Positions 5,601-42,060 of a stretch of 64,000 nucleotides of DNA are shown here, piece by piece (the stretch's first letter is position 1; each line of letters opens with the position of its first letter). Origin of the DNA: Ophelia neglecta (Eukaryota); assembly GCA_965285935.1 (NCBI GenBank), contig OZ260666.1, positions 24,304,001 to 24,368,000 on the forward strand, in the 5' to 3' direction. The translations under genes were made by a program, and so were the position numbers. The notes below the pieces were generated by a model that ran no database searches, was not told where the DNA came from, and saw only the letters and a program-made list of their open reading frames with translations.

Positions 5601-8600
5601 TAAAGTGCAAAGGCAATAAAATAGTTCATTCATGGTACGAATTGTATTTTTATATAAAACACATAATTTATTTTTCTAACATAATTTCACTACCCCCCCC
5701 CCCCCCCCTTTAGGTGAACGTGGTGTCATTTTCTGACTACGCTCACACGCCATCAGGAGCGACTATTCCGGAGTGCTTCAGAACAAAGTTGACTGTAGCC
5801 TCTCCGGCCAACATAAGGAGTTTGTCGAAGTACGTGGACAGTTTCACGGTAAGAACGCATGAAGAATTGCCATTTTTACAACATTTCATCGTACTTCATT
5901 ATTTGACAAACTACATATCATTCGCGCATTGTGTCCAGGAAAGAAGCCGAAAAAACTTTATTATTAACAATTGCCATCCAGTCAGGTGGAGGCACCAGGT
6001 ACGGTCGAGCTATCATAAAGGCTTTCGAGCTTTTGGTTCAAGCAGGTGGGGAAGGCGAATCACGAGGTAATAATTCAGCGTTCAATATATTCATTTAGAA
6101 AGACAGAGCATGTGTTGGGATTGATGAAATAAGCCTGAGATTGGTTGGGTATCTGCGCCTAGCAAGAGAGGGCTTGGCGGTCGTATAAGCAAAGTAAAAA
6201 GCATAACCTTTAATGTTCTTTAATGTAACAGTAACTTTACTGCACTATAATATATTATTAACTAAAAGATATAGCATTAAGAAAGCCGCTCTGGTTGGTT
6301 CATCTGGAACATTTAAATAATAAAAAAGAAGATTTAAAATGTGATTGATCTTCATTAAACTAATTATTGTTTATAAAAGATAGAGCCATTCTATTCCTGA
6401 CGGACGGGGATCCAAACGATGATAAGGTTTCAATTTTGAAAACAATCTCTGAGAGGAATTCCCACAATAATAGCGTTGTACTATTCACTTTTGGAATAGG
6501 TACGTGTATTGCTCGTGTAGTATATATAAAACAATACCCATTTGACTTTTGTCTATTTATTATATGGGCTTTCATGAACTTGATTAAGCAGTTAGTTAGT
6601 TTATTTGTTTGTTTGTTGGCTCGAATTTTGCGGTAAACAATAGTTTATTTAGATATACTATCCTCAGTCAGTTGTACGTTTGTAACTTTATTTCTTATGT
6701 TGATTTCTCTTCGTAATCATTGTTTGTTTTCCAGGTTATGTTGGAAGCATTGGACGGGATGTCCTTCGCGATATGACAGACGCACCTTTTCCATATGCTA
6801 GGGTCAGTTAATTATTCTCAATATTAATAAAAGAAACCCCAGCACGTTCCAATTGCGTCCAAATGTAATTATCTTTCTTAGGTGTTCAAGCAATTTATGA
6901 CATTAAGCACTAAACATTTCATTTATATGTCTTGAAAGTGGTGCTCCACACACATGTCACACACCTTTTTTTCCGTGATTAGCCTGGACGATACTTAGAA
7001 ATAAGAAATTCTGATCGCCTGAGACAAGACATGGCTTCGTACTATGATTACTTCAGTAAACCAGTGGATTCTGCTTTAATCTCTAGCCCCTATGTTGATG
7101 CATTCGGATTAGGTAAGTTTGTATATATAAAGTGAATCTTAATACCAATTCACAGTAAAATGATAGCTTTCATATTGTTTTTTTTTATTATCACTTATAT
7201 TACTCAAAAAACAACATTCTTTTGAATTTAAATGCAATAAAAATCCACCAATACGTGGTCTTGGTAGCTTTTTATAGCCCTGTTACTTTGTTAAACCTGT
7301 AAATTAGGGCTCGGCACTTAGGAATTTGGTCTCAATACGGTTACCGAGTTATCGAAGCAGGGATTTTCTTCCACGATTTTCTACTGCTGCAGCATCTTTT
7401 AGTGGACACTTAATAACTATGCCAATGATTATTCCTTCTTCGCTCACTAAATCTGATAAGGTGTGGTCTAATATCTATTTATTTGAAGTGAGTGTCTCGT
7501 TCGGCCTTTTTAAAGCCTTTATAACTATAAGTTCAATGAATAGTGTAAATATACTATTATGAGTTCATTTTTTATAGCATTTGCAGAAGTTTAACAACGC
7601 ATATAAGTGTTTATAAATAAAAATTTCGAGTATTTATGCTTGTTTGCAATCACTTCGATCATTGCAATATCTGTAGCGAAAGATTGCTGTTGTCTTTAAA
7701 GGTTTGGTAGTGACTGTGTCTCTTCCTGTGACGTATCATAATCAGTTTATAGGGATCGTCGGCACGGACGTTACTATGGCTGATCTATTGGCTCCGGTGA
7801 ACTTTCTTCAAGACGGGGTTAGCATTCATTTCATCGATTTATTACAATGGCTCTCGCCTTTTAAAGACCCGGCAGTGCTAAGCCGGAAACAAGGAAGCAA
7901 CCGGGTAAAAGAAACCAGCGGCCCAACAGTAAATAAGTCTGTAAAGAAAATGAAAACAATAAATTTGATGTGACCATATTTTTGTTATTTCATATACTTG
8001 TTTACTTCAAATGCTTACACCTTTAATTAATCTTCTTGTTGGTACTCTGGTAAAGCGTTCCAATGATTCTTTATATACTTATTCAGACCGGAAGTGGTGT
8101 CCTATCTTATGCTTACGTCATTGATAATGACGGTCTGACCCTCTCACATCCATTACTACCACAAGCACACGCCGTTACAGATGCTACACTGGCGTTGCAT
8201 ATAAAGGAGCTTGAACTTCACCCGAAGAAAAGATCGATTATGGACCAAATATTAACGTCTGTTATTTTAGGGCACAATACGCTATTTGTTATTTCCACCA
8301 TCCTGGTCCTATTACTTCTTCATACTGCGATAATATGATGATTCGTGTATTGTGTTTTTGGCGTCATTTTTCAAATATTTTCCTCAAGCCGTGTAATATA
8401 ATTTTATATTCAATAACAGTTATCATACTTTAAAATCAGTTAATATTCATATTCAACGACAGTCCGTCTTTCTACTAATAAAACCTTTGATTTTGTTGCA
8501 GAACAAATAATGGTACAATCGCTTCGTACGTTCCACATTTGATATCTAAAGGAGAGTTATTCAGGGGGGTCAAATTGGTGGATCATTACACCAGTTACCA

Positions 8601-11600
8601 CTGGTCCTTGGTAAAATAGAACAGTTCTACCAAACACGTTTAATAAGAATGTTTCATTTACTTAAGCCACTGTTTTATATATTTTAGGAGATGCATAGTT
8701 TAAGGATTCAAAAACGTATTTTGTAAATTTGTTTGCAGGTGCAAACGACAAAGTTAAAAGTTTGTGTTGTTCTAGCACAAGGAGAAGCTACATTTAGGTT
8801 ATTTGAGGGTGACACTTTAGTAGGAATGCCTTTCACATATCACCAATTCAACCTCACGGGTTTGGAAGCAAATCAAACCTGCAGGCATTTCAAAAGGCAA
8901 GCGTTGAAAGGCAAGTATTGTAAATTGATTGTGAGAGAGACAAATCATTCTTATGGAGAAGGGGTGATTAATTCAGTCACGCTTTGTCAATATTTGTCAA
9001 AACTATAATCATTCTTTGCAAATTGCTTTATTCGTCGCCTGTAGCAGTAAAAATGTACTCTCAATAAGAGTTTATTCCGTTTGTTTCACTACTTTTCAAT
9101 ATAGACCGATCTGTGGTCAAATTCGCTGCTAGAGCCTTTCAGAATCCGTTTGAGTACCTTGACACCGTGGAGACCTACAAAGACGTTCGAAATTATGATG
9201 ATATCATAAAATATGGCGCATCACATAAACTATTTCAGGTATTTAGTTTAAAACTTTAAACTGTTGAATAGAGCTAAACAGACTATTCGAAGTGTTTCAG
9301 AATTGCCTTTCTTAAAAACTAAGTAAATTTGAATATGTAATAACTGTTTTGCTAGATATGCTATTTTACAGTGAATGCTCTAAAATGGGTATGCCAGCGG
9401 CTCAGTGCCATACTTCGGAGTGTGCGTGTTTACCTATTAATAGCTGTTAGAAAATTTAAGTTCTACGCCAAGTTTACACTGAATAAGTGTGCTACTGCGT
9501 GTCATATTTCTTGTAGATCTTTATGACTAGTAAAACAGTATTATGTTGGCATGAGGGTCCCTACCCATCATTAACCAGTTTGTCAAGTAGATCAAGTAAG
9601 GAACATTTTTGCGTAATTAATCTATGTTTAATAACAGTTTCGGGATCGACATATACAATGGCCTAATATATTTTGAAATAGAAGGAAAAATTATCGACCC
9701 CGTTTGTGATATGTGGAATCGATACAAAAGAAACTAACATCCTTGAAATATTGGTCCTGTATTTTAGTGTATGCGAATTACAAAGATATGTTTATATAAC
9801 GTATCCTTACAGTCAACTGATGAAATTTGTAGGATGTGATGGGAAACCGAGTTCGCGACGTGTAGCAAAATAAATAATTTTATGCTAGTTATAACATAAC
9901 ATGGGTCATGATGTAAGTTGCCTAAACACTACAAAAAATTCCTCGCTTATATGTAGGACATTTCTCTACATTAGCAGACACACATCAACAACGGTCCGCA
10001 TTGTGACAATCCAATGAATAAAATGCGATTTTGTTTTGAGCCATTGGTTAGCTAGGAACAATTATGACAACAAACGCCTGGGCATGTTGGTTTCAAATTT
10101 TTACCCATTTGGTTTCCTTATAATTTCTAGCCATCCTCCAAATGGCCAAAGCACCTAAACCGTGTTCTATTTTTCCGGCTCTTGTCAACATTGAATACTG
10201 CTCAGATTTTCTGTGCCGTCTTGCTGGACCTTGTACTGTACAAAGGATCACATTTTGTACATATGTATTTTACGCCCTAACATTTAATCTCCGCTCATTG
10301 ACAGGACGGGGTATTGGAAGCTTTGAAGTGGACCTCAAAGGTTCACGATATCTGGTTTGATAGCCTAGCGGACGTTAGCCACGTGGTTTGGAGATATATT
10401 GCAACACCACAGGGGGTAATTCGAATTTACCCTGGCGTTACCTTAAACAAGAACTATGATCATACTCGCAGAAGCTGGTAAGAAAAGGATATTTTTTTTT
10501 GCCTTAAAGACTTTTTCAGCGACATTCTCTTATGGGCAGATGGCATCAATGGGGAAAAGACACCTTTCCAGGAATTACATTTACCATATAAACACAACAG
10601 TTTTAAGTAATGTTAACTCTGATAAGTCATCTGAAACTGCAGAGACCCGCTGTGTCTCTTTAAAATAATTAGTCTTTACATTGCTAAAAAATTCTATAAT
10701 ATAGGTATCGCAGGACGGTAGCTTACCCAGAGAAGACAGTGATTTCTGCACCATATCTGGATGCATTCGGAGCAGGTTACGTCGTCACTATCAGTAAAGT
10801 TCTGACATTTCCCGGGTAACTGTTTATCAGAATGTGTTTTATTCAGAGTCCACATTAAATAATAAAACTGACATTTTATGCCATGACTCAAACGTTACCA
10901 TTATATTTATATGGAACATTGATGTGAAATTAACTTTTCTTTATCGTGAAAGGCAGAGCGATGTGCCTGTTGGAACCTTTTTAAGTAACATACGAAAACG
11001 TACAAAAGGAGACTTAATAAGCCTACAGTTTAATGCTTCAGAGCGGGCGACCCCTATGTGAGAATCGCCGGAGTAATCGCTATGGACGTCACTATCGGTT
11101 TTATGCACCGACAGGTCATGAAATCCTTCTCTAAATGCCAAGAGCAGTCACACCGGTGAGTAATAAGGGAATCTGTTCATTGACCATATCCTTCAAATGC
11201 GTTTTTACTTAAAGCGGATATAACTTTTCCGACCATAAATAATACATGGTTATGTTATAGAAGGAAACCGAAAGGTTTTGATTATAACATAGGTACCAGC
11301 AAAACGTTAGTTTAGTTTTGAAGAAATACAAATATAACGTCCACATAGGACTTAATTTGATAATAATTGGAGAATACTGGATACTAGGCTTTGTGTAAAC
11401 GGCGAAAGAGAAAGCTATGGCGAAAGCATCATTGGTAGGAAAATAATCTACAAAATCAATCATTTTATAACTCAACCACAATCTACTCAACCCTATTTTA
11501 TACTGGGTATAAATGTGGTTGGGTAGCTTTAGCATGTTCTTTTTAAACTATTCTAAGAGAAGTTGTATCTTTCATCTTATCTGTCGCTTACGCCGTCTAC

Positions 11601-13802
11601 ACAAAACCAGGTTACTGTCATTTGTACCTTCCAGATGCTTTTTAGTAGACAGCGATGGGTATCTGGTAATGCATCGTGACTTTGTCACCCCAGAGGGACA
11701 GATGAGCTTTGATGTAGAAAATGTTCACATAACTCAAAAAGTACATGTGTCCTTTATATATTCGGCTTGTTGTTATTCGAAGTAAGTTCAAAGCACCGGC
11801 TAGTTTAAACTCATTGGAATCTATATTTAGCCAAATTGGATTATTACATTTTTTTCAGGAACATCAACTGGCCCGTGTCCTCGTCGATCGAGGGATTATG
11901 GGCACTCTTTCTTGTAACCAGTATTCATCCTTACACATACAAGTATATTATGAGGTAAGTGACAGATCAACACCAGGAAATGCACCTTGTTGCTTTTATT
12001 CAATACGTTTATATAATAGTGATTTCAGGTAAACGATTTCTTTCTCTCGTACTATTGCCTTATATCAAACACCTGGAAACATGTGGGATTTGACAGCAAC
12101 ATGGAAATAAGCATTTCAACGGTGGCCCATCTCATCACTATTTAAATCTCAGGTTTGAAAATGTCAATACATGACCGTAAGTTACAAAGTTTTGTAGAGC
12201 GAACTGTGGTACTCTTTCTTTAGGTCAATACGCATGGAAGCATTTTGAGCTCTGACAAGAGTAATCAGGCAGAATTATACCCAGTTAGAAGAACTAACCT
12301 TTACCTAGGCATCAATCAAGGCACAAAGACCTCCCAATCATGTGTCTGCGTCGGAATGGTACTTATCATTATTAAAATATATTGTGGGTCGTCATTAAGT
12401 GACGCTATTGGCATAGACTGTTGTGTTTTTGCACTCAATAATATGCCGGATGGTTATACTATTGTCACTTGCTTTAATCTTGCGATGGCTTAAAGCATAT
12501 TTAACATTTATCATAGTAAACACTTACACTTCAACGTTTATGAGGTAGTTTATTTGTTCTGTCAACACCCTTTTCTTTGCTATTAAAATGACTATTTTTC
12601 TCGTGTGAATACTTGGTGCATTTAAATGGATGAGTGTTTGTAATATAAGCCGCTTATACACCAGGCCTTTCCTCCAGACATCTAGGTTACCATTGGAGTG
12701 CCCCACTGGCTCTGCCATTTCATGTCCATGTCCGTGCTACGAAGAAACCAAGGATTACCATTACTGTAACGACACCTTCAGGGAAAAGTAAGTTAACAAA
12801 CGCGCTTAACGCTTTGATAGACAAGTGAAAATTGTCATCTTTAATGTTCTATGGATTTTCAACAAAAATCTGAACTTATATTTTATTAGCGACCTGAATC
12901 TGTGTATCCCTAAAAAGGCTCCGATTGACATGTATCCCCAACTCAGGCGGGAATCGAGACAGATTGAAAAACTGGAAATGTGCTTTGACCCACATTGTAG
13001 ACAGAAAACCACTTTTCAGTAAGATGTGTTCCTTAACGGTTTTTAACATGAGATGGGGTAATGTAGTTTTAATGCAAAAAAAATTATTATGTGTTCATAA
13101 ATTTAGCAATGAGTACACGTATGAAAAAAAAGAAAAGTGGATTATCACTTTTCATTGATAAAAGTGGAATAATCAACATTGTGTCACACATTAAACCTGT
13201 ATTTGGAATGTGATCAATAATTTGACAGGGCGTGTTACCCCCTCTCTGGGTGTGCATGGTGTCAACCGTCCTTGCAAGGAGCTGCTGCGTGTTATTATCA
13301 GGAGGATTGTTCCGAAGCCACTACCCAGACACGATCGTCTAACGAGGCCCTAACTATAGTACTGTCAATAGGCATATTCGTGCTGCTTGTAGTAATAGTT
13401 GTAGGAGCCGAGAAGCTCTACTATCACATATCAGAATCTCAAATACCCAGACCAGGGGTCCAGAATGGATCTCAAATACCCAGGCCAGGGGTCCAGAATG
13501 GATCTCTAATACCAAGGCCAGGGGTCCAGAATGGATCTCAAATACCTAGACCAGGGGTCCAGAATGAATCTCAAATACCCAGGCCAGGGGTCCAGAATGG
13601 ATCTCAAATACCCAGGCCAGGGGTCCAGAATGAATCTCAAATACCCAGGTCAGGGGTCCAGAATGCCGCGTTTGATCCGGACTCACATCACGCAGAACGA
13701 CCAGACGCATATAATCCAAACTATATTGACAACTCACGTGGAAACCCATTCGAACCGCCTCCCTCATATCCTTCGGTGGTTAATACCTCCAAGCCTATGT
13801 AA
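2687..13802 (+). CDS. CACHD1: VWA and Cache domain-containing protein (CACHD1-like / alpha2delta-related), copy 1; 25 coding exons, ~1184 aa
   Basis: Phase-consistent exon model: 2687-2845, 3123-3191, 3355-3522, 3999-4110, 4425-4521, 5179-5341, 5714-5848, 5982-6066, 6380-6499, 6735-6802, 6983-7112, 7702-7817, 8087-8256, 8502-8610, 8739-8910, 9105-9238, 10305-10477, 10705-10815, 11042-11155, 11635-11740, 11859-11954, 12224-12358, 12678-12787, 12890-13018, 13229-13802 (3555 nt). Motifs: signal peptide MWKLLVVSCIVG.., LKWQYFGTETG, YDPRFRPWY, KDVVIVIDTSGSM, GGT, ILFLTDG, PYVDAFGLG, YDHTRRSWY, RCFLVDSDGYLVMH, Cys-rich stalk, TM ALTIVLSIGIFVLLVVIVVGA. The symbol denotes the family; one-to-one orthology is not established. 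Confidence 0.9.
4687..4840 (+). repeat. Degenerate ~18-bp intronic minisatellite (gacactgggctaaagtac); also at ~31050-31203
   Basis: Successive variants gacacggagctaaagtac, gacactggtataaagtac, gactgggctaaagtac. Confidence 0.6.
13434..13664 (+). repeat. Coding 33-bp VNTR (SQIPRPGVQN[G/E]) x7
   Basis: Tandem atctcaaatacccaggccaggggtccagaatg(g/a) in the last exon, directly after the TM segment. Confidence 0.95.
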
Positions 13803-16108
13803 TTAAATTGCATTAATAAGACAGGGTGGCACTTGATAGCGACCATCTATGGTCTTAATGGTGTCTCCCTGGTCCCGAATTGTTTTGTTTTTTTTGCTCT
13901 TTTCTAATCATTTTTAATTATTTATTACCTGTTCTCATCACCAATATACTATGTATATTGTAATTATTGGGTTTTTTGGACGAAATAAACCAAGTCTGAG
14001 TCTGAATCTAAGTCTATCCACTCGGATATGCCGATGCTGACTTTCTTTTGGTTCCAAAGACACAATGCATATCCCCCGCCTATGGATTTCCCGGTCAGAG
14101 CTTTCGCATTCTGGACTAGTCAATCTGATACAGTTGTCCGTACCGAGCCAGCCCTTTTTTATTTAGTCGATTTTAACCTTGTTCACCATTACATAGCTTT
14201 ATATTGTTTTTTTGAAGATAATAATACCACTAATTGTAATACTACTAATACTACTACCAAAACTATTAGATATATTGACTAGTAAGAATAGAAGAGAGAA
14301 TATATAATATTACATTAACAAAGGATAACTATTTACATATTTGAGTTTATGGCCCCTGATGTAAAATAAGCATTACAAATCCCGGTTGTTTCACCATTCC
14401 AGTTGCTGTCAAATAATGCTTTAGATTTTCTATCTTCAGGTTGTCTATGTCGTGCTAGACACGTTAAACTCAGGTCTAAAACACACCATTACTCAGCGAA
14501 ATGTTTATTGAATACTAGATTTGGTATTTCTGTTGGAAGGCGTCGGGATCGAAGGGAGTTCATTTGTACATAGTAAATAATAACATGAAGACGGCGCTGT
14601 GTCGAAATTGGTTGTATTCTTAAGTAGAATTATAACGACATGATACAATGTACAAAGGTGGGGGACAAAGCCCCACAATACTGTCATGAAACATTCTCAT
14701 TCTAAAGTATATGTAATCTGTGATTTTTACACATATTTAGTACACCTAACATATGCACAACCTTTTAATACCCTTCAATTGAATAATACCTTTACAGTAG
14801 TTGTAATGAAGCACTAATTTATCATAATGTGTTGTCGAAAATTATTGACATTGGAATTTTACAAACTAGTCATATGTTCTAATACTGTAACACCTTACCA
14901 AATAAAGTGAAGTAAATTACTGAATTAATCTAGTTTCTAGCTGACAAATTAACATTTACGTATACCTGTATATAAACGTTTTTAAGTAAGTTGTAGGAGG
15001 AGGATGGGGAAGGTGGCGGGATTAACCACGAGGCGACCGTCCAGCACGGCGACGAGGCAGAAAAGACAGAGCGCCTCTCACTTTGGCTGGGTGTGCAGCC
15101 AAACGGAACAGCCCATCTGGCGGTCACATCTGGACTGTGGTGCCGCCCGGCAGCATATAATTGTCCACTGGGTCAGCACCTACTGCCCGCATACTACGCG
15201 GGCTACTATCCCGTCCCCATCCCCCAGAAAACCATTTATATTATATAAATTACATTTCTGTTGGAAGGCGTCGGGATCGAAGGGAGTTCATTTGTACATA
15301 GTAAATAATAACATGAAGACGGCGCTGTGTCGAAATTGGTTATATTCTTAAGTAGAATTATAACGACATGATACAATGTACAAAGGTGGGGGACAAAGCC
15401 CCACAAAGACTCGCCCGCGAGGAGACCCCCACCCGCACAGAGATTCGACGCATTCCCAAGAAGTTTATTGTGAATTACACAAAAAAGAAAAGTACACCAT
15501 TTACACATCAATTACATGTAGTATGTGTATAATTCTAATGTCAAATTATCTATAAGTAATCTGCCTCTCCAAAGGCATAAAAAAAACACACACAGGGAAA
15601 TGATAACCTGTTAATACAAATAATACTAGTGCATTCTTATGCACTGGGTTATTGGAACCTGCCATCCCAAACACCATGCGCTAAGCACATACACTACAAA
15701 TTCACCCTTATTAATTGTGGATTCGATCCCGTGGTTTATTTATCCTACTGTGTCCCAGGAAATCGCCCATGCTAAATTTCCTGGCACTTAGACCTATTCT
15801 ACCTAATGCAGCTTTTTATTTCTTACATGTGTAAGCTATATTTTTGGAGATTTTAAATTGGTCAGTTTGCCTCACTACAGTAGAAGCCGCCCATGTTAAG
15901 CCTCTGGAGTGTAAAACTACTTATAACCTTATCTTTTTCATAATTGTTATATAATATGTTAACTGGTGTGGTGAAACCGCCCATGCTAAGTTTCATCCAC
16001 TTACCTGAATTAAAGAAACTTGTCCTTCAAACCTAATTTATGGCTATTAAACTCCTTCAAAACTACTAAACTATCAATATATGTTAATATTTGTGGGAAC
16101 CGCCCATG

Positions 16109-17002
16109 CTAAGTTCCACATATGTGTTTTGAAACAGCTCCCTGGAACAACGGGAAGAACAACTCATTGATTTTTCTATCCCACGGAGCCAGAGCGGTAT
16201 TTTGCTCCCTTAGCAACCTATGGAGTTTATCGTATTCCACCCAAATGTTAGGTGGGCACGAGTGATGGATTTCCCTGATTGTTGTAACATATTTCATCAA
16301 ACTAGGGGCCGCTGCCTGATGGACTTCTGTGTATATCGCAATGAATATGAAAAATGCTGCCGACCATTCATCAAATGATTTAATCGGTTTTGTCTTATTC
16401 TTACTGTGTAACGAAATAGATGGGCAGTGGTCAGTTTCCGAGACCGTTATACTCATTTGCGAATCTCCCTGCTTTGGAAGCAGAGTAGAGAGGTCGACAT
16501 ATTGGTCGGCCAAAAGTTTTGCCCGAATTTTCCCATTTACCCCCCAGCCTAACGGTAACGTCTGTTGAACCTCAACTGGTATTTGCACATTTGGTATTTC
16601 TCGTGTATGGGATGGCAGGTTACCTGTATACATTGAGTCCATTACCGCCTTCAACATCTCATCTGCAGTCAGCTGCTGAATTTGCTGACCAGTGTTGCTT
16701 GGTGGGGCGCCACTTATTGGACCTTGTGGTGGAACTTGGGGTTCATGTGTCTGTGGAGGTCCCGCAGACTTCTGATTGGCCAGGAGATTAGCAACTAGCA
16801 CAGCCATGTCCGCCAGTTGATCATTGGACAGTGCTATCGTTATCGGTTCGTTGTTGTCTATCTCGATAACCGGCACTGTATCGTTCTCCTTCACAGGTTC
16901 ATTTGAGTTTGGGGTGTACTCCCCAGGTTTGGCTGCTTTACCCTTAACGTGGTTGCGTTTATTTCCAGCTGCTTGGCGTGTCTTTTTCTTGTGTGGTGCC
17001 AT
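16109..17002 (-). CDS. Gag-like protein of DIRS/Ngaro-group retrotransposon, C-terminally truncated
   Basis: Open frame from ATG 17002 (MAPHKKK). Pattern KIRAKLLADQYVDLSTLL...WSAAFFIFIAIY...LMKYVTTI...WVEYDKLHR...W matches my recollection of YR-retroelement Gag. No C-terminal zinc finger. Confidence 0.82.
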   Translation of the reverse strand: MAPHKKKTRQAAGNKRNHVKGKAAKPGEYTPNSNEPVKENDTVPVIEIDNNEPITIALSNDQLADMAVLVANLLANQKSAGPPQTHEPQVPPQGPISGAPPSNTGQQIQQLTADEMLKAVMDSMYTGNLPSHTREIPNVQIPVEVQQTLPLGWGVNGKIRAKLLADQYVDLSTLLPKQGDSQMSITVSETDHCPSISLHSKNKTKPIKSFDEWSAAFFIFIAIYTEVHQAAAPSLMKYVTTIREIHHSCPPNIWVEYDKLHRLLREQNTALAPWDRKINELFFPLFQGAVSKHICGT

Positions 17003-18357
17003 GCTGTAATGCAATTAAATAAGAAGCAGACATTTCTGTTCAGAAATAGAATATAACAGAATATTCTGGTGATTGGCCGATAATCCATTGTTGGAACTAT
17101 ATAACTACATATAAAAATGCGTTATAGACTATAATAAGCAATTCAGGCTAGGCCTATAGGTTAAATAGTTCATGACTATGTCCTGTAGTTTCCCAGAAGG
17201 GGCCTACTGTATGTATTGGACAGGGACTGCTTTTAACCACAGTACTATCCTAACTTAGATCCACTACCTTATAATAAATGCTTGCCTAAAGAAAGCATAT
17301 TCTATTATTAAGGACCCGTGTTCAACCAAACGAAATCCAATTGTATTAAAATAGTCAAACTAAAGTTACGTAGAAATCACGCAAAAGGCGAACAAACTGC
17401 TGTGATAATTACACGTCGTAAAAAAACATTCCATACCTCAGGATCGTCGCCCCAGCACTCCGAATAAATTTTGTCCTCCCATTAAGAGGTTAACTTATAG
17501 GCCAAAACAATTAGTGACACGCCCATTCATCCCTACTATACTTAAACGGGGTCCTGTTTGCTGAGCGAGGGGGACCGAGGAAGCAGACACATCAAAAGCC
17601 ACTCGTGACCATGGCCGATTCTCAGTAGGTCACATAACGTCCCAGAAATCTGCCACACGGTCTCCCACTCCAAGTTTAACCCCAACATGATCCTGCATGG
17701 ACCCCCTGAGTACAGCCGGATAAACGGCCTAAACTGCCTCGCATGGGCCAGACGCATGCAGTGACCCCCTGTGTCAACATGTTTTCTTACTGTTAACCCT
17801 GCACTAAACGCTCGAGCCAGACACCTGCTCCTGAGCTGCATTCCAGCAACAATGCAAAAGTTGTGCAGGGCTAAAGGGACTAAACGGCGATACATTAGTC
17901 ACTACAAGTTGGCCAAATCTCAAAATTACATCACTTCCAATGGACTGTGGCACGGGGCCACCTTCCAGTTCATAGTTATAAGTGCACACATTGTGCGGGA
18001 AGGATAACCCCGGCCCGCCATTATATCATAATATCCGAAACCAGATTTAACTTATTAAATACATGTGACATCCACCACTGAAAAACGCCATACTAATCGC
18101 GAATGTCGCCATAATCAACCTAGACAAGAATAGGCAAACAAAAACATGGACATCCTTCATTTAAAATGGCCATGTTGTAATCTGCAAGGCCAGATCCTGT
18201 CCAAATAGCTGACCAAAGCGACACAAACCTCCCAATGGTGGTGAAAATATGGCGCCTCACAGCAATACATGCAGTATTCAGATGCCGGAGCGACAAGGGG
18301 GAGTATGTAACGTACTATAATAGTGTAATGACTAGTTAGCATCAACTGCACCATGGC

Positions 18358-18990
18358 CTACCGCCGCCGTATAGCCTGCATGACGGCGCCTCGGATATCC
18401 TTGTATAGTAGGCATTCCCCCCTACTATTTAAATGTAAGTGGTCGCGTGTTAGGCGTTCTGCAGGATTTACAGCAATATTACAATTACCTCTATGATTCC
18501 ACCAGGTAATGTTAGGAAACTGATTGTCGTTATGAAGCGCAACTAAAGTCGCTTCAAATAAACTATTGAACTCGTCTACGAGTACATTGAAGTTAGACGG
18601 TGTGCGGGCGCAGTCTGGGCCACGATATATAACGCTACCCCACACCACCTGTGATACATTATGACCAAGTACCAAAAACTTCGCAAACGACAACATGTCA
18701 GCCACCAATTTATCCAATTTACCCAAATTTTCTATGGAAGTAATGTCCAGGGTTCCCACTTCGATATATATAATATCACGATTTACTACCAGATATGGTC
18801 TAGAGCACCCCGGCAAGTCTCGCACTTTCAGCCCGCCTCTGCCAGCGAATGACACGTGTCCGACCTGGTCAGGCAATCCCAAGTTTGGGAGAAATGGAGG
18901 ACTGCCGTCGCTACGGTGTATAGAAGTGGCCAGTCTTTCTATGAAGCTATGCCCCAGTACTAATACGTTCACACGTAACTCTGCTGACAT
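18358..18990 (-). CDS. SGNH/GDSL-type hydrolase (esterase) carried by the retroelement
   Basis: 210-aa open ORF with block I VLVLGHSF, block II GRGG, block III IEVGTLD (usual Asn replaced by Leu) and block V RDHLHLNSRG. Confidence 0.85.
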   Translation of the reverse strand: MSAELRVNVLVLGHSFIERLATSIHRSDGSPPFLPNLGLPDQVGHVSFAGRGGLKVRDLPGCSRPYLVVNRDIIYIEVGTLDITSIENLGKLDKLVADMLSFAKFLVLGHNVSQVVWGSVIYRGPDCARTPSNFNVLVDEFNSLFEATLVALHNDNQFPNITWWNHRGNCNIAVNPAERLTRDHLHLNSRGECLLYKDIRGAVMQAIRRR

Positions 18991-19639
18991 GTTCCCGAGC
19001 GAATAAAATTGTCAATTGTTTAACTTGGTCTTTACCTGTAATGGTATCTGTATTCATTTGTTGGTGATTAACCACGAGGCGACCGTCCAGCACGGCGACG
19101 AGGCATCAAAGACAGAGCGCCTCTCACTTTGGCTGGGTGTGCACACCCAGCCAAAGTGAGAGGCGCTCTGTCTGGCCAAACGGAACAGCCCATCTGGCGG
19201 TCACATCTGGACTATGGTGCCGCCCGGCAGCATATAATTGTCCACTGGGTCAGCACCTACTGCCCGCATACTACGCGGGCTACTATCCCGTCCCCATCCC
19301 CCAGAAAACCATTTATATTATATAAATTACATTTACGGTTGCTTTCACTCGCTTGGTTTATGTGTCACTGATGGAATTATTCGGAAAAAGAGGACTATTT
19401 TCATGTTCTTGAAATCTTATGGTTTCTGTTTAAGGTAGCACCTGTGAAGGAGATCTTTAGACTTCAAGAAGATCACGAACTAGCTGAGGCTGAGAAAATT
19501 TACCTTCCAGTCCAAAGTGGACAACGGGAGACATCAAAGCAGAAGGTCTTAAAGATGGAGCTTGGGGCCACTGTTGTCTAAAATGCTCGAGTCGGTTGTC
19601 GCACTAAGGACGATTATTAATCTTTATTCCTCCAGTGAT

Positions 19640-20265
19640 AGGAGAGTACAAGTAATCGAGAAAAAAAATACAAATTATTTAATAATACAAGGGAATTATT
19701 TAAATCAAATAATAATGTGAAAATAAAATATGTATATTTTAGAAACAAAAAAATATGACTAACCAGTAAAATGGAACATAAAACGTGGAAAGCAGTTGGG
19801 TCACAAATTTTACCCTACAACACCAGTCTTGTTCAAGTTCACATTGCTACATTAAGGGTTATTTTTCAGAAATACTTTCAAGTAAGGTGAGCCTACAATT
19901 GTACATTTGCCATACCGCCTTAGCTACACATGCGTGAGCACCTGCGTGACCTTCTACAAAAACTTCGCCACACCCCAGTAACCATGCTGCTGTCCTCTCG
20001 TCTAATGTGAGATGGAGACCCGGTTTTGGTGCAGGCATGGGAGAAATCTGCTCCTTAACACTCAGGGCATCATAGAGAGCGGCCCGGGATGTCGACAAGG
20101 CTGGACATCGGATTAGAAAGTGCTCTTCCGTTTCTAGATCACCGTCACACAGTTTACACACTTTATCGTCATATTTCTTGCCTAATTTGCCTTTATATGT
20201 CAAAGCGTCTGCGCCAATTAGGATACGATATGTATTATGCAAAACTAACGCTTCGCGGAACATTT
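19640..20265 (-). mobile_element. 5'-truncated non-LTR retrotransposon (LINE) 3' fragment
   Basis: ORF 19859-20263 contains CKLCDGDLETEEHFLIRCPAL, the C-terminal CCHC knuckle typical of LINE ORF2. Boundaries approximate. Confidence 0.75.
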
Positions 20266-21773
20266 TGATAAGCTACAAACACAATTATCTCGTTCTCATA
20301 AACTGAATATAAAACTCAAATAAGATGCTTTAAAAGCACCAGCGAAACTTTGTAAAGGTGGTTTTGAACTCTTGTTTTGAACCTGTGTTTATCTTGTTTT
20401 CATAGAGATCTAATACAAAACAAGTTTTTACTTAAATGTGCAATTGTTCTCCCCAGTGACTTGATTGTTGGATTTCCATGTACATGTTTGATTTATTATG
20501 TACTATGTTGTTTTGTTGTTTTATAATATAATAATGGATACACTGACAAATATTAATTCAAACAAAGAATCGTAATGTTTTTTATTCAAAATGGAGTTGA
20601 ACTAATTGTGATAAATACGACCAGAAAAATGGCAAGAACAGTGGGTATCGCTGGCCATAATAATGAGAAAAGTCGAAAGTAGAAAATGATTATACAATGG
20701 AATCTGAGAATACAGAACAATGGATGCAATACAACTACTAGCAGTAAACAACATAACCAAAGCATGGGTTAATAAAACAATTTGAACGTTTGGTTAATGC
20801 TTATTTTGTATGCGAATATGTAAGTAAGGCCTTTTGAACAAATTTCATTTGGTGGCCATTCGAAAATATTCATATGCTAATTATTCTTTTTGATTTCGGA
20901 CTGATTTGGTTGGCTTGTCTTTATGGATGAATGACTCTGTCTGCAGGGTAAGCACTCCCGGTTTTTAATCATACACGTTAGACATATTTGTTTTTGTTAA
21001 GATTATCAGTACACATATCGACGGCAATAAAAGACTTGTGGCAAAACCATGTAACATTTCTTTAAAGCGAGTAAGATTGAGAATCCGTCACTCGACACAT
21101 TTGCCTCTTCGATACAGTTCTGTACGCGTATTATTTCTTTTCATCACTAAATACCCTGTCGAAGGAAAAATGTCTTGGCTCGAATACTAGCTAACTCTTT
21201 AGCCGAAGTTTTTCGTCTCTCACTAATGTGAAGTGCTATTTTATTTCCGTCAGTCGCTTGGAGCTGGTGGGTCGGCCTTACCGAAACTAATCCTGTACTG
21301 TCTGTGGTTCCGCTATGAGGGTGTTTTTAAGTGTGCTTCAAATAGATTTCAAATACGTCTCGAGCCAATTAACGTTATAAAATGTGTTTATCGAGCCTAT
21401 GTAAAACTTAAACGTGTGACGCTTAACTGAAAGATATGAACAAGAAAATGTACTATTTTATAAACAAAAACGGAGCGGTACATTTCCGCCGATTGAATCT
21501 AGGCCTACAATAAATATGGATTCTTCTGAAGATGTTTAATTAAGTTTACCAGAAAGCACTAGCATGCTTATTGAGACTAAAGCTGACCGCACATGGTCTA
21601 TGCAAATGGCGACCGCATTTAACAATAATTCAAGAAGCTCCGAGCCGGAAGTTTAAGTGTATCAACCAAATATTCGGCATTTCATGTTCGTGTCGAAGTA
21701 GTACAATAATTTTACGGTATCTTAATTTAACGCACGGTCTGTCAAGTCCGCCAAAAAGACACATATTCACATC

Positions 21774-21939
21774 GGGTCTCTGTATCCAGCGCTGTAGCAC
21801 TGCGCAGCATAACTCGGTGCTGCGAGTCTGGTTCTGCTCGGAGAGCGGGGTGTTATTTGGGTCAGGGTAGGGTAATTCTTTTGTTCTCTCGCAGCCCCGC
21901 AGCCCAGCGTCAAACAGCGCAGCGCTGAATACAGGGAGC
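21774..21939. mobile_element. MITE with 9-bp TSD (Mutator-like)
   Basis: Imperfect TIRs gggtctctgtatccagcgctg / cagcgctgaatacagggagc, flanked by attcacatc at 21765-21773 and 21940-21948. Confidence 0.8.
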
Positions 21940-22173
21940 ATTCACATCAATGGCATGATAATAAATTGGTACCGTGGCTACTGAAAACAAAATTGGACTT
22001 GTTGGCCCAAGGACTTTTAAGTGTGGTCAGAACCGGGCTCCTCCAGGATCCCATGCAATAAGATATTGAATTTACACAAGCAGAACTGTTGGTTGAAATT
22101 TGCTTTTCATTTTACAAAACTTTACAGCGGAGAAGATCAGTTAAGATTTCCTAGTCTAAGTTGTAAAATGACG

Positions 22174-25113
22174 ATAGTTTGACCATACGCCCGTAGGCGA
22201 CATCACAGGAGTGGAAAGGTTGAGGGCCATAGGTTGACCATAGGCCCGCAGTGGACATCACAGGAGTGGAAAGGTTGAGGGCCATAGGTTGACCATAGGC
22301 CCGCAGTGGACATCACAGGAGTGAAAGTGAGAGGAACATAGGTTGACCATAGGCCCGTAGGGGACATCACAGGAGTGAAAAGTGAGAGGAACATATGTTG
22401 ACCATAGGCCCGCAGTGGACATCACAGGAGTGGAAAGTGAGAGGAACATAGGTTGACCATAGGCCCGCAGTGGACATCACAGGAGTGGAAAGTGAGAGGA
22501 ACATAGGTTGACCATAGGCCCGCAGTGGACACCACAGGAGTGAAAAGTGAGAGGAACATAGGTTGACCATAGGCCCGCAGTGAACATCACAGGAGTGGAA
22601 AGTGAGAGGAACATAGGTTGACCATAGGCCCGCAGTGGACATCACAGGAGTGAACGTGAGAGGAACATAGGTTGACCATAGGCCCGCAGTGGACACCACA
22701 GGAGTGTAAAGTGAGAGGAACATAGGTTAACCATAGACCCATAGGGGACATCACAGGAGTGGAAAGTGAGAGGAACATAGGTTGACCATAGGCCCGCAGT
22801 GGACATCAAAGGAGTGAAAGTGAGAGGAACATAGGTTGACCATAGGCCCGCAGTGGACACCACAGGAGTGAAAAGTGAGAGGAACAAAGGGTGACCTTAG
22901 GCCCGCAGTGGACATCACAGGAGTGAAACTGAGAGAAACATAGGTTGACCATAACCCATAGGGGACATCACAGGGGTGAAAAGTGAGAGGAACATAGGGT
23001 GACCTTAGGCCCGCAGTGGACACCACAGGAGTGGAAAGTGAGAGGAACATAGGTTGACCATAGGCCCGCAGTGGACATCACAGGAGTGGAAAGTGAGAGG
23101 AACATAGGTTGACCATAGGCCCGCAGTGGACATCTCAGGAGTGGAAAGTGAGAGGAACATAGGTTGACCATAGGCCCGCAGTGGACACCACAGGAGTGAA
23201 AAGTGAGAGGAACATAGGTTGACCATAGGCCCGCAGTGAACATCACAGGAGTGGAAAGTGAGAGGAACATAGGTTGACCATAGGCCCGCAGTGGACACCA
23301 CAGGAGTGAAAAGTGAGAGGAACATAGGTTGACCATAGGCCCGCAGTGAACATCACAGGAGTGAAAAGTGAGAGGAACATAGGTTGACCATAGGCCCGCA
23401 GTGAACATCACAGGGGTGGAAAGTGAGAGGAACATAGGTTGACCATAGGCCCGCAGTGGACATCACAGGAGTGAACGTGAGAGGAACATAGGTTGACCAT
23501 AGGCCCGCAGTGGACACCACAGGAGTGTAAAGTGAGAGGAACATAGGTTAACCATAGACCCATAGGGGACATCACAGGAGTGGAAAGTGAGAGGAACATA
23601 GGTTGACCATAGGCCCGCAGTGGACATCAAAGGAGTGAAAGTGAGAGGAACAAAGGTTGACCATAGGCCCGCAGTGGACACCACAGGAGTGAAAAGTGAG
23701 AGGAACAAAGGGTGACCTTAGGCCCGCAGTGGACATCACAGGAGTGAAACTGAGAGAAACATAGGTTGACCATAGGCCCATAGGGGACATCACAGGAGTG
23801 AAAAGTGAGAGGAACATAGGGTGACCTTAGGCCCGCAGTGGACACCACAGGAGTGGAAAGTGAGAGGAACATAGGTTGACCATAGGCCCGCAGTGGACAT
23901 CACAGGAGTGGAAAGTGAGAGGAACATAGGTTGACCATAGGCCCGCAGTGGACATCTCAGGAGTGGAAAGTGAGAGGAACATAGGTTGACCATAGGCCCG
24001 CAGTGGACACCACAGGAGTGAAAAGTGAGAGTAACATAGGTTGACCATAGGCCCGCAGTGAACATCACAGGAGTGGAAAGTGAGAGGAACATAGGTTGAC
24101 CATAGGCCCGCAGTGGACATCACAGGAGTGAACGTGAGAGGAACATAGGTTGACCATAGGCCCGCAGTGGACACCACAGGAGTGAAAAGTGAGAGGAACA
24201 TAGGTTGACCATAGGCCCGCAGTGAACATCACAGGAGTGGAAAGTGAGAGGAACATAGGTTGACCATAGGCCCGCAGTGGACATCACAGGAGTGAACGTG
24301 AGAGGAACATAGGTTGACCATAGGCCCGCAGTGGACACCACAGGAGTGAAAAGTGAGAGGAACATAGGTTAACCATAGGCCCATAGGGGACATCACAGAA
24401 GTGGAAAGTGAGAGGAACATAGGTTGACCATAGGCCCGCAGTGGACATCAAAGGAGTGAAAGTGAGAGGAACATAGGTTGACCATAGGCCCGCAGTGGAC
24501 ACCACAGGAGTGAAAAGTGAGAGGAACAAAGGGTGACCTTAGGCCCGCAGTGGACATCACAGGAGTGAAACTGAGAGAAACATAGGTTGACCATAAGCCC
24601 ATAGGGGACATCACAGGAGTGAAAAGTGAGAGGAACATAGGGTGACCTAAGGCCCGCAGTGGACACCACAGGAGTGGAAAGTGAGAGGAACATAGGTTGA
24701 CCATAGGCCCGCAGTGGACATCACAGGAGTGGAAAGTGAGAGGAACATAGGTTGACCATAGGCCCGCAGTGGACACCACAGGAGTGAAAAGTGAGAGGAA
24801 CATAGGGTGACCTTAGGCCCGCAGTGGACACCACAGGAGTGGAAAGTGAGAGGAACATAGGTTGACCATAGGCCCATAGGGGACATCACAGGAGTGGAAA
24901 GTGAGAGGAACATAGGTTGACCACAGGCCCGCAGTGGACATCACAGGAGTGAAACTGAGAGGAACATAGGTTGACCATAGGCCCGCAGTGGACACCACAG
25001 GAGTGAAAAGTGAGAGGAACATAGGTTGACCATAGGCCCGCAGTGGACATCAAAGGAGTGGAAAGTGAGAGGAACACAGGGCGACCATAGGCCCGCAGTG
25101 GACATCACAGGAG
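22174..25113. repeat. Satellite array: ~54 monomers of 54-56 bp with an ~821-bp (15-mer) higher-order repeat
   Basis: Consensus ggttgaccataggcccgcagtggacatcacaggagtggaaagtgagaggaacata. Diagnostic variants recur at 821-822-bp spacing (aaactgagagaaac near 22926, 23747, 24568; catctcagg near 23131, 23953). Confidence 0.97.
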
Positions 25114-41844: not shown

Positions 41845-41960
41845 GGTAAGATTATTTCATGTGGTGGAAAATATTCTTAGAAATATCATACGAATGAAGG
41901 CGAAGCCCGAGTCAATCGTGATATATTCTAAGAATGTTTGGCACTAAGTGAAATAACTGC
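41845..41960. repeat. Short imperfect palindrome / foldback element
   Basis: Arms ttatttca..attcttagaaatatca..cga and tcgtgatatattctaagaat..tgaaataa around a ggcgaagcc loop. Confidence 0.55.
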
Positions 41961-42060
41961 CTCATATATATGATGAGTGCATTGCAGAAAAGACCGACAC
42001 TGAGTCACTCAGAAGCAGTACAACATTGTATGTGTTAACAAAAACAATGTTGGCTAAGGT

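What the first reader, a model, noticed from the sequence alone, without database searches (positions are those of the whole stretch)
14526..19334. Enzyme-less YR retroelement that keeps an SGNH hydrolase upstream of Gag
Seen: a complete A1...B1-A2-B2 split-repeat frame with near-identical repeats and a clean ATTT crossover core, two open ORFs (SGNH 210 aa, Gag 297 aa), and no room for RT, RNase H or recombinase. Established: split direct repeats define Ngaro/PAT elements, and some Ngaro elements carry an SGNH hydrolase, to my knowledge downstream of the recombinase. Inference: this may be a recently mobilised satellite-like family that supplies its own capsid and esterase and borrows RT/YR in trans, with an atypical hydrolase-first order. 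Gag ends inside the first copy of the repeat motif that follows YR in the neighbouring element, consistent with a single large internal deletion.
Basis: partly seen in the sequence, partly recalled or inferred. Interest (0 to 1): 0.85.

Follow-up and report, generated by a model that had tools for sequence, protein, structure and literature searches.

The report
Defective hydrolase-first Ngaro-like retrotransposon copy
This is a real but defective copy of a tyrosine-recombinase retrotransposon that has lost its enzymes through an internal deletion. Its "unusual" hydrolase-before-Gag order is normal for its lineage, and nothing here shows that it is a mobile satellite family.

Summary
On the minus strand, 19334-14526 carries split direct repeats: A1, then B1-A2, a 341-nt spacer, then B2. 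They are about 99% identical, and a 4-nt AAAT core lies at both ends and at the B1/A2 junction. There are two open ORFs and no RT or recombinase.

- **ORF1** is a true SGNH-fold protein but a divergent one. The block III Asn is Leu, and it gets no Pfam hit.
- **ORF2** is homologous to the ORF that sits directly upstream of RT in full-length relatives. It lacks their C-terminal CCHC zinc knuckle and matches no known capsid fold.

The hydrolase-first order is not special to this copy. In 80 related loci from public metagenomes, every locus with enough sequence reads Hyd > Gag > RT > YR, and none has RT or YR upstream of the hydrolase. The A2-spacer-B2 layout, the stem-loop array after YR and a conserved motif at the start of B are also lineage traits.

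The element is best read as one internally deleted, non-autonomous copy that keeps all recognisable cis signals. Copy number and an autonomous partner could not be tested, because the host genome is in none of the collections. The only other YR element in the window is a degenerate copy of a different family.

One thing is unexplained. A 14.5-kb duplicated block ends exactly at the element's B2 end, and homology does not resume on the other side.

The parts
19066..19334 (-). A1 split direct repeat (269 nt). It begins with the AAAT core at 19334-19331.
   Evidence: matches A2 with 3 substitutions in 238 aligned nt plus one 31-nt indel.
19110..19173 (-). Perfect 30-bp hairpin inside A1. It is created by 31 extra nt (19174-19144) that A2 lacks.
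   Evidence: indel. DNA fold -42.5 kcal/mol, z = -11.2, 0 of 200 shuffles as stable.
18358..18990 (-). ORF1, 210 aa: a divergent SGNH/GDSL-fold hydrolase homologue. Ser15, Gly52, Asp183 and His186 are kept; the block III Asn is Leu81.
   Evidence: at least 849 relatives, nearly all Pfam Lipase_GDSL_2; 36 of 73 conserved columns; AF2 pLDDT 79, Foldseek hits to GDSL acylhydrolases, PAF-AH and sialate O-acetylesterases, E about 1e-6; no Pfam hit for this copy.
17003..18357 (-). 1355-nt non-coding interval between the hydrolase and Gag. It is longer than the 480-870 nt seen in relatives.
   Evidence: no tblastx similarity to relatives; no repeat elsewhere in the window.
16109..17002 (-). ORF2, 297 aa: Gag-position protein, C-terminally truncated. 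It has an MAPHKKK N-terminus like the relatives' MPPKKR, keeps the conserved core at residues 142-285, and lacks the Cys/His knuckle region. The stop codon lies in hairpin 1 of the array.
   Evidence: 31% identity to the L003 ORF between the hydrolase and RT, E = 1e-20; 1538 relatives, typically 330-400 aa; CCHC columns absent; core pLDDT above 90, no structural or sequence match in PDB or BFVD.
15754..16124 (-). Array of four stem-loops (16124-16091, 16001-15968, 15911-15878, 15787-15754). The apical sequence CUUAGCAUGGGCGG is conserved and the stems covary. In full-length relatives this kind of array follows the YR stop.
   Evidence: 5 matches against 0.8 expected; folds; 81% of cells paired against 68% in shuffles, 1 of 500; 5 of 8 pairs with compensatory change; equivalent arrays in L003, L008, L009.
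15386..15432 (-). Conserved 3' motif (GTGGGG, small hairpin, TTGTGG, T-rich stretch, CCCCAC) that straddles the start of B1.
   Evidence: the motif lies 460-850 nt after YR in 15 of 25 relatives, against 1 match in 179 kb of coding control. It is also present in the neighbouring element at 43957-44001.
15254..15406 (-). B1 split direct repeat (153 nt). It ends with the AAAT core that it shares with A2.
   Evidence: 152 of 153 identical to B2.
15020..15257 (-). A2 split direct repeat (238 nt).
14679..15019 (-). Unique AT-rich (30% GC) spacer between A2 and B2.
   Evidence: A2-spacer-B2 is also seen in relatives L009 (107 nt) and L010 (62 nt).
14526..14678 (-). B2 split direct repeat. It ends with AAAT (14529-14526) at the element/host boundary.
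   Evidence: The boundary is confirmed by the paralogous block, whose homology stops at 14527/40877 and which has ATTT at that site.

Best explanation
The 4.8-kb unit is one internally deleted, non-autonomous copy of a split-repeat tyrosine-recombinase (Ngaro-like) retrotransposon.

**Lineage.** The normal layout of its lineage is A1, SGNH hydrolase, Gag, RT/RH, YR, stem-loop array, conserved 3' motif, B1-A2, spacer, B2.

**The deletion.** A single deletion of roughly 2.7-2.9 kb (inferred from relatives' sizes) removed the Gag zinc-knuckle tail, RT/RH and YR. It fused the Gag frame to the first post-YR stem-loop.

**Integration.** The copy, or its full-length parent, entered the chromosome by recombinase crossover within a 4-nt AAAT core shared by the B-A circle junction and the target. 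That leaves AAAT at both ends and no target duplication. This step is inferred from the anatomy and from the published DIRS/Ngaro model.

**When the deletion arose.** It could have come from template switching during the reverse transcription that made this copy, or after integration. The sequence does not say which.

**Present state.** The copy cannot move by itself. It keeps every cis feature I could recognise, so trans-mobilisation is possible in principle. I judge a one-off defective copy more likely than a propagating family.

**Confidence.** Identity as a deleted hydrolase-first Ngaro-like copy: about 0.9. One-off rather than family: about 0.6.
For: - Split repeats and AAAT core.
- No RT or YR inside the element.
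- ORF1 is an SGNH homologue.
- ORF2 is homologous to the ORF directly upstream of RT in relatives.
- Full-length relatives all read Hyd > Gag > RT > YR. Seven contexts were examined first. In the 80-locus survey, 31 loci are fully colinear, 17 more read Hyd > Gag > RT, and none of 9 loci with at least 2.4 kb upstream has RT or YR upstream.
- A2-spacer-B2, with A1 directly before the hydrolase, in L009 and L010.
- Stem-loop arrays directly after the YR stop in L003, L008, L009 and the neighbouring element.
- The Gag stop lies in hairpin 1, and the knuckle present in 103 of 150 relatives is missing.
- Conserved 3' motif at the B start.
- Internal-deletion derivatives occur as single copies in a related family (L002).
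- Repeat divergence is about 1%, against 2-4.5% between the flanking duplicated blocks. The insertion is therefore young relative to that duplication.
Against: - No full-length member of this exact family was available, so the deletion end points are inferred from relatives at 25-40% protein identity.
- The window Gag is also short between the conserved core and its end, so more than one deletion is possible.
- Copy number in the host genome is unknown, so a family cannot be excluded.
- The right flank does not continue the paralogous block. This is not what a simple insertion predicts, and it could mean recombination between copies or a mis-join through a multi-copy repeat.
Confidence: 0.62

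Rival explanations
1. One reading: a trans-mobilised, satellite-like family. On this view it keeps the hydrolase and Gag because they aid its own propagation, and it borrows RT and YR from an autonomous partner.
For: - All recognisable cis features are intact: A1, four stem-loops, the 3' motif and B1-A2-spacer-B2.
- The repeats are about 99% identical.
- Both ORFs are open.
- DIRS-1 RT has been shown to act in trans on an RT-less construct (PMC7192593).
- SIRE is a known non-autonomous VIPER derivative (PMC6681497).
- The flank discordance at the element is easier to explain if at least two near-identical copies exist.
Against: - There is only one copy in 64 kb.
- No partner is in the window. 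The only other YR is a pseudogene of a family whose B repeat is about 67% identical.
- Open ORFs say little at about 1% repeat divergence. My estimate is roughly 0.3-0.4 expected stop-creating substitutions in 1.5 kb.
- Gag lacks the nucleic-acid-binding knuckle, and the hydrolase lacks the oxyanion-hole Asn.
- In related families I found one-off deletions (L002). A candidate shared junction (L023, L029, L051, L054) turned out to be ambiguous.
Confidence: 0.25
2. An assembly artefact. On this view the internal 'deletion', the placement of the element, or both result from a collapsed or chimeric join through repeated sequence, in a heterozygous genome whose haplotypes were assembled in tandem.
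For: - Window 1-14527 and 26339-40877 are 95.5-98% identical, and the homology stops exactly at the element's end.
- Nothing beyond the element matches what follows the second block.
- The right flank is itself a repeat, a LINE 3' fragment.
Against: - There are no Ns or gaps.
- Both ends of the element are complete, with the expected AAAT core.
- The Gag reading frame runs cleanly into hairpin 1.
- The internal order of features matches relatives.
Confidence: 0.1
3. A naturally short element type that never encoded RT or YR. This would be a composite of captured hydrolase and Gag genes between split repeats.
For: None specific. Only the absence of a full-length member of the same family.
Against: - Both ORFs and all non-coding landmarks are homologous in sequence or design to those of full-length Hyd-Gag-RT-YR elements, and they lie in the same order.
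- Gag is truncated relative to 1538 relatives.
Confidence: 0.03

Closest known systems
Ngaro retrotransposons with an SGNH ORF (for example Xenopus DIRS-53_XT; Goodwin & Poulter 2004 as summarised in PMC9210276)
   Same: - Split direct repeats A1...B1-A2-B2 of almost the same sizes: A 236 and B 152 bp in DIRS-53_XT, against 238-269 and 153 here.
- An extra SGNH-type ORF, a Gag-like ORF and no methyltransferase.
- YR downstream of RT in the full-length relatives.
   Different: - Published descriptions place the hydrolase after YR. Here and in all relatives found, it is the first ORF, directly after A1. The gene order is the same on a circle, but the B/A junction sits between YR and the hydrolase instead of after the hydrolase.
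- A2 and B2 are separated by a spacer.
- This copy has no RT/RH or YR.
SIRE, the non-autonomous derivative of VIPER in Trypanosoma cruzi (PMC6681497)
   Same: An enzyme-less derivative of a split-repeat YR retroelement that keeps the terminal repeat material.
   Different: SIRE is about 430 bp, non-coding, corresponds to the A2+B2 region and is highly multi-copy. This element is 4.8 kb, keeps two ORFs and is seen once.
Internally deleted, trans-complemented retroelements in general (truncated DIRS-1 constructs, PMC7192593; my own knowledge: LARD/TRIM-type LTR derivatives)
   Same: Loss of the enzymatic ORFs with retention of termini and cis signals. For DIRS-1, reverse transcription in trans has been shown.
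   Different: No evidence of mobilisation here. Retention of an accessory hydrolase is not a described feature of those derivatives.
PAF acetylhydrolase Ib catalytic subunits and bacterial GDSL/SGNH acylhydrolases
   Same: Closest solved structures to the hydrolase family, both by profile (1fxw, E = 2e-7) and by fold (TM 0.6-0.66). The Ser, Gly, Asp and His positions are conserved.
   Different: The window protein has Leu in place of the block III Asn and falls below Pfam detection. Substrate and role in the element are unknown.

Membership tests
Ngaro (split-repeat YR retrotransposons) | Split direct repeats A1 ... B1-A2-B2, with the internal repeats at the 3' end | tested here: met
   A1/A2 and B1/B2 are about 99% identical and B1 abuts A2. 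Deviation: a 341-nt spacer lies between A2 and B2, as also seen in relatives L009 and L010.
Ngaro (split-repeat YR retrotransposons) | Encodes RT/RNase H and a tyrosine recombinase on the same strand | tested here: not met
   no RT or YR similarity inside 14526-19334. It is met in the relatives (RVT_1 above the Pfam cut-off; YR with HSFRIGAA ... GRW-SDA-Y motifs and a weak Phage_integrase hit). The window copy is therefore a derivative, not a functional member.
Ngaro (split-repeat YR retrotransposons) | No methyltransferase domain (this separates Ngaro from DIRS/PAT) | tested here: inconclusive
   Relatives' RT ORFs are 506-576 aa, are directly overlapped by the YR ORF, and show no MT Pfam hit. 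This cannot be assessed in the window copy, where that region is deleted.
Ngaro (split-repeat YR retrotransposons) | RT/YR phylogeny groups with reference Ngaro sequences | not tested
   No reference Ngaro protein sequences were available in the tools, and the primary papers (Goodwin & Poulter 2004; Poulter & Butler 2015) are not held.
Ngaro (split-repeat YR retrotransposons) | Integration by crossover in a short core shared by the circle junction and the target, with no target-site duplication | tested here: met
   AAAT lies at the A1 start, the B1/A2 junction and the B2 end. The paralogous empty site at 40877 carries ATTT. Only the B2-side flank could be checked against an empty site.
SGNH/GDSL hydrolase | Block I nucleophile Ser in a G-x-S motif near the N-terminus | tested here: met
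   G13-H14-S15, nearly invariant in the family alignment.
SGNH/GDSL hydrolase | Block II Gly | tested here: met
   G52 is invariant in 50 sequences.
SGNH/GDSL hydrolase | Block III Asn (G-x-N-D) | tested here: not met
   The window has G79-T80-L81-D82, while Asn is present in all 49 other sequences of the alignment.
SGNH/GDSL hydrolase | Block V D-x-x-H | tested here: met
   D183 and H186 are conserved. This loop is modelled with low confidence (pLDDT below 50 for residues 173-191).
SGNH/GDSL hydrolase | SGNH alpha/beta/alpha fold and family-model score | tested here: inconclusive
   The fold criterion is met: Foldseek gives 126 PDB hits at E <= 1e-3, and all the top hits are GDSL/SGNH enzymes. 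The Pfam score criterion is not met for the window protein, but it is met for relatives P0001 and P0002.
Retroelement Gag (nucleocapsid-type) | ORF immediately upstream of, and slightly overlapping, the RT ORF | tested here: met
   This holds in the homologues' elements. In the window, RT is deleted.
Retroelement Gag (nucleocapsid-type) | CCHC-type zinc knuckle | tested here: not met
   C-x2-C-x3/4-H-x4-C occurs in 103 of 150 relatives, and in 84 of the 100 that are at least 320 aa. It is absent from the window ORF.
Retroelement Gag (nucleocapsid-type) | Capsid-like fold | tested here: inconclusive
   The core at residues 150-290 is modelled confidently. It has no match in PDB or BFVD at E below 0.04 and no PDB sequence-profile hit.
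Trans-mobilised non-autonomous family | Several copies with the same internal junction at different loci, plus an autonomous partner with matching termini | not testable with these tools
   There is a single copy in the window. The exact proteins and a 26-nt A-repeat probe are absent from the public collections. The host genome is not available.

The most novel reading that the evidence does not exclude
The copy belongs to a propagating family of hydrolase-plus-Gag 'satellites' of a hydrolase-first Ngaro lineage, mobilised in trans through the retained stem-loop array and the 3' motif. Its position exactly at the edge of a 14.5-kb duplicated block would then record an element- or recombinase-mediated rearrangement. 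A separate point: the hydrolase-first arrangement is widespread in public metagenome data but is not described in the papers I could read, so it may be an unrecorded architectural variant of Ngaro.
Probability: 0.2. Interest if true: 0.6.

Novelty: new variant of a known kind. Interest (0 to 1): 0.33.

Why it matters
For the window itself it matters little. Deleted, non-autonomous copies are the common fate of retrotransposons.

Three things of modest value came out of the check.

1. **A large hydrolase-first clade.** The hydrolase-carrying YR retroelements found here form a large clade: at least 849 hydrolase relatives and 1538 Gag relatives. In this clade the hydrolase is the first gene rather than the last. 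This differs from the published Xenopus description by a shift of the B/A junction around the same circular gene order.

2. **Two conserved non-coding features.** One is an array of stem-loops with identical loops and covarying stems just after YR. The other is a compound motif that marks the start of repeat B. Both are candidate cis signals for packaging, priming or recombination in a group whose replication is poorly understood.

3. **A copy to use in testing.** This copy keeps all of these signals but none of the enzymes. If the host genome holds an active partner, it is the natural object for asking which signals are sufficient for trans-mobilisation.

Tried and rejected
- **Pfam on both ORFs:** no hit at E <= 1. 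Homology had to be shown through relatives.
- **Word-based homologue search with Gag:** blank. The exhaustive search found 1538 relatives.
- **Exact-protein look-up of four window ORFs:** not in the collection.
- **26-nt A-repeat probe against metagenome contigs:** no match. Copy number is therefore untestable.
- **Rfam on the whole window:** nothing.
- **A conserved third ORF in the 1.35-kb hydrolase-Gag interval:** none found.
- **A YR C-terminus hidden near the deletion junction:** none in any frame.
- **Nucleotide homology between this element and the neighbour:** only about 67% over roughly 100 nt of the B repeat. They are different families, and the neighbour cannot be the partner.
- **Split repeats in the L003 family:** not found, although other relatives have them.
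- **A precedent for a propagated enzyme-less derivative:**
  - L002 is RT-less, but its junction-specific ORF is single-copy.
  - L023, L029, L051 and L054 share one junction with different downstream ends.
  - Their post-junction sequence lacks the lineage's 3' hallmarks, and their ORFs are decayed.
  - It may therefore be another repeat inserted into RT, so I do not count it as evidence.
- **Aligning the Gag tail 'SKHIC' to the relatives' knuckle 'KHxC':** rejected as evidence, because the final Cys-Gly-Thr codons are encoded by the hairpin-1 stem.
- **Simple insertion into the duplicated block:** rejected, because homology does not resume after the element.
- **Unequal crossover between flanking elements:** rejected, because the orientation and sequence of the neighbour do not fit.
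- **Primary Ngaro papers:** not held.


Full report
**1. What is there**

The element lies on the minus strand between 19334 and 14526. Repeat finding and self-BLAST and pairwise alignments give these repeats:

| Repeat | Coordinates | Length |
|---|---|---|
| A1 | 19334-19066 | 269 nt |
| B1 | 15406-15254 | 153 nt |
| A2 | 15257-15020 | 238 nt |
| B2 | 14678-14526 | 153 nt |

B1 and B2 differ at one position. A1 and A2 differ at three positions and by a 31-nt indel. B1 and A2 overlap by AAAT, and the same four bases open A1 and close B2.

Three details were missed:
- A2 and B2 are separated by a unique, AT-rich 341-nt spacer (15019-14679).
- The extra 31 nt in A1 are an exact inverted copy of the neighbouring sequence. 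They create a perfect 30-bp hairpin (-42.5 kcal/mol, z = -11).
- The four copies of TTAGCATGGGCGG occur only inside this element.

There are no Ns in the window. Nothing suggests human sequence.

**2. The two ORFs**

*ORF1 (18990-18358, 210 aa).*
- It has no Pfam hit of its own.
- It aligns over 96% of its length, at about 31% identity, with two 191-198-aa proteins that score above the Pfam cut-off for Lipase_GDSL_2.
- A profile search found at least 849 relatives of about 190 aa.
- An AlphaFold model built on 50 of them (pLDDT 79, pTM 0.82) matches GDSL/SGNH acylhydrolases, PAF acetylhydrolase Ib and sialate O-acetylesterases (E about 1e-6, TM 0.6-0.66).
- The family profile also hits PAF-AH Ib by sequence (2e-7).
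- The protein keeps Ser15, Gly52, Asp183 and His186.
- It has Leu where every other aligned member has the block III Asn, and it matches only 36 of 73 strongly conserved columns. Other members match 63-73.
- It is an SGNH homologue whose catalytic competence is doubtful.

*ORF2 (17002-16109, 297 aa).*
- The word-based search found nothing. Exhaustive phmmer found 1538 relatives, 250 of them at E <= 1e-10, typically 330-400 aa long.
- It aligns at 31% identity (E = 1e-20) with the ORF that lies between the hydrolase and RT in a full-length element.
- Its closest relatives sit directly upstream of RT, so the positional label 'Gag' is justified.
- Its N-terminus (MAPHKKK) resembles the relatives' MPPKKR start.
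- Relatives end in a Cys/His region. A retroviral-type knuckle, C-x2-C-x3/4-H-x4-C, occurs in 103 of 150 of them (84 of the 100 that are at least 320 aa). The window ORF lacks it.
- The conserved core is modelled with pLDDT above 90. It matches nothing in PDB or BFVD, so 'capsid' is not shown.

**3. No enzymes here**

tblastn with RT and YR proteins from related elements finds nothing between 14526 and 19334.

The only YR similarity in the window is at 42165-43052 on the plus strand.
- Its reading frame has in-frame stops, and the catalytic-Tyr region is broken.
- It is followed by five 63-nt units carrying CTTAACAGGAGTGG (43183-43465).
- It has split repeats at 43981-44124 and 44611-44749.
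- It has only a faint RT C-terminal trace at 40966-41256.
- Its B-type repeat is about 67% identical to the B repeat studied here.

It cannot serve as the partner.

**4. The hydrolase-first order is the lineage norm**

Contigs encoding the nearest hydrolase and Gag relatives all read hydrolase, Gag, RT (RVT_1), then a YR of about 300 aa.

In the L003 family, element boundaries were fixed by comparing independent copies. The hydrolase starts 232 nt from the 5' end.

In L009 and L010 the contigs are permuted and read YR, motif array, [B+A], short spacer, [B+A], hydrolase. This shows two things. A1 sits directly before the hydrolase, and A2-spacer-B2 is normal (spacers of 107 and 62 nt).

A survey of 80 further loci from public metagenomes gave:

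| Arrangement | Loci |
|---|---|
| Hyd > Gag > RT > YR, colinear | 31 |
| Hyd > Gag > RT | 17 |
| Hyd > Gag | 6 |
| Hydrolase only, at least 2.5 kb downstream | 7 |
| Hydrolase only, contig too short to judge | 18 |
| Hyd > RT > YR | 1 |

Most of the Hyd > Gag > RT and Hyd > Gag loci simply run off the end of the contig. Among the 9 loci with at least 2.4 kb upstream of the hydrolase, none has RT or YR upstream.

Published descriptions that I could read place the Ngaro hydrolase after YR (PMC9210276; also PMC7192593). On a circle the gene order is the same. What differs is where the B/A junction falls. This is my inference. I could not check Repbase or the primary Ngaro papers.

**5. Non-coding landmarks support one internal deletion**

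Each of the four motif copies is the apex of a stem-loop. The stems differ between copies but stay complementary:
- 81% of cells are paired, against 68% in shuffles (1 of 500).
- 5 of 8 pairs show compensatory change.

With only four copies this is suggestive rather than conclusive. The same design follows the YR stop in L003, L008 and L009, with three or two hairpins spaced 106-167 nt apart.

In the window, the Gag frame ends with codons supplied by the stem and loop of hairpin 1. Gag's tail, RT/RH and YR are therefore missing, and the array begins at once.

Further downstream lies a compound motif: GTGGGG, a small covarying hairpin, TTGTGG, a T-rich stretch, then CCCCAC. It is found 460-850 nt after YR in 15 of 25 relatives, against one match in 179 kb of coding control. 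It is present at 15432-15386 straddling the start of B1, and in the neighbour at 43957-44001.

The element thus keeps every cis feature I can recognise. From the relatives' ORF sizes, the missing piece is about 2.7-2.9 kb.

**6. Family or one-off?**

The window holds one copy. The exact proteins and an A-repeat probe are absent from the collections.

- Open ORFs are weak evidence. With about 1% repeat divergence, I estimate only 0.3-0.4 expected stop-creating changes in 1.5 kb.
- In a related family, an RT-less derivative (L002) is single-copy.
- A shared junction in L023, L029, L051 and L054 looked promising. Its downstream sequence lacks the 3' hallmarks and the ORFs are decayed, so I do not count it.
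- Trans action of a DIRS-1 RT is documented (PMC7192593), and SIRE is a non-autonomous VIPER derivative (PMC6681497). The idea is plausible in kind.

My probabilities:

| Reading | Probability |
|---|---|
| One-off defective copy (born deleted, or deleted in place) | about 0.6 |
| Mobilised family | about 0.25 |
| Assembly artefact | about 0.1 |

**7. An unexplained neighbour effect**

Window 1-14527 is repeated at 26339-40877 at 95.5-98% identity. The homology stops within a base or two of the element's B2 end.

The second copy has no element at that point, but it carries ATTT there within a short ACCAAAT-like repeat. This confirms the B2 boundary and fits an AAAT target.

However, the sequence beyond A1 (19335 onwards) is a LINE 3' fragment followed by a 55-nt satellite, and it matches nothing after 40877. 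So this is not a simple insertion into one of two paralogues.

Possible explanations:
- a tandem duplication whose junction holds the element. This is testable, because the sequence to the left of the window should then match 19335-26338;
- recombination between element copies;
- a mis-join through a multi-copy repeat in a heterozygous assembly.

The last two would both imply further copies.

**8. Verdict**

The element is a deleted, non-autonomous copy of a hydrolase-first Ngaro-like lineage. The gene order is inherited, the two retained proteins look impaired, and mobilisation as a family is untested.

Noticed in passing
window 1-14527 and 26339-40877: A block of at least 14.5 kb is present twice at 95.5-98% identity, with a period of about 26.3-26.4 kb. 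It starts at the window edge, so it may extend further left. Its right end coincides with the element's B2 end in copy 1 and with the 5'-truncated end of an old YR element in copy 2. Homology does not resume beyond either element.
   Followed up: partly
window 40966-44749 (+): A degenerate, 5'-truncated Ngaro-like element of another family:
- faint RT C-terminal trace at 40966-41256;
- YR pseudogene at 42165-43052, with in-frame stops;
- five 63-nt units at 43183-43465;
- conserved 3' motif at 43957-44001;
- split repeats at 43981-44124 and 44611-44749, with 486 nt between them.
   Followed up: yes
window 15754-16124 (-); L003:8652-8933; L008:5368-5634; L009:868-1088: Arrays of two to five stem-loops directly after the YR stop. 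Within a family the apical sequence is conserved, while the stems are variable but complementary. These are candidate protein-binding or packaging signals in this lineage.
   Followed up: partly
window 15386-15432 (-); 15 of 25 related loci, for example L012:5672 and L018:7198: A conserved compound motif of about 47 nt: GTGGGG, a small hairpin whose sequence covaries between families, TTGTGG(C)G, a T-run, then CCCCAC. It marks the point where repeat B begins.
   Followed up: partly
window 19110-19173 (-): A1 carries a 31-nt inverted duplication absent from A2, which gives a perfect 30-bp hairpin. It looks like a fold-back or template-switch mutation in one repeat copy.
   Followed up: partly
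window 22105 to about 25000: A long tandem array of a 55-nt unit, with a higher-order period of about 820 nt visible in the identity pattern. It is GC-rich (about 51%) with strong GC and AT skew, and it produces spurious ORFs on the minus strand.
   Followed up: no
window 19859-20263 (-): A 134-aa ORF with the C-x2-C ... H ... C motif typical of the C-terminal end of non-LTR retrotransposon ORF2 (weak Pfam zf-RVT hit, E = 0.0095). This LINE 3' fragment abuts the A1 end of the element.
   Followed up: partly
window 13272-13802 (+) and its duplicate near 39857-40156; window 50783-54712 (+): Host-gene-like features. One is an ORF with seven 33-nt in-frame repeats (PRPGVQNGSQI units). The other is a series of SRCR-like cysteine-rich exons spaced about 620-680 nt apart. 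Together they suggest an invertebrate-type genome. The host was not identified.
   Followed up: no
L002:7765-11006 against L003:3858-9293: In a related family, one copy has an internal deletion equivalent to L003:5425-7616. It removes most of Gag and all of RT but keeps the hydrolase and YR. Its junction-specific ORF is found on one contig only.
   Followed up: yes
L003:3862-9295 (also L001, L004, L005): This 5.43-kb full-length family shows no detectable split direct repeats at its ends, although it has the post-YR hairpins and the B-start motif. Its terminal structure is unexplained.
   Followed up: partly
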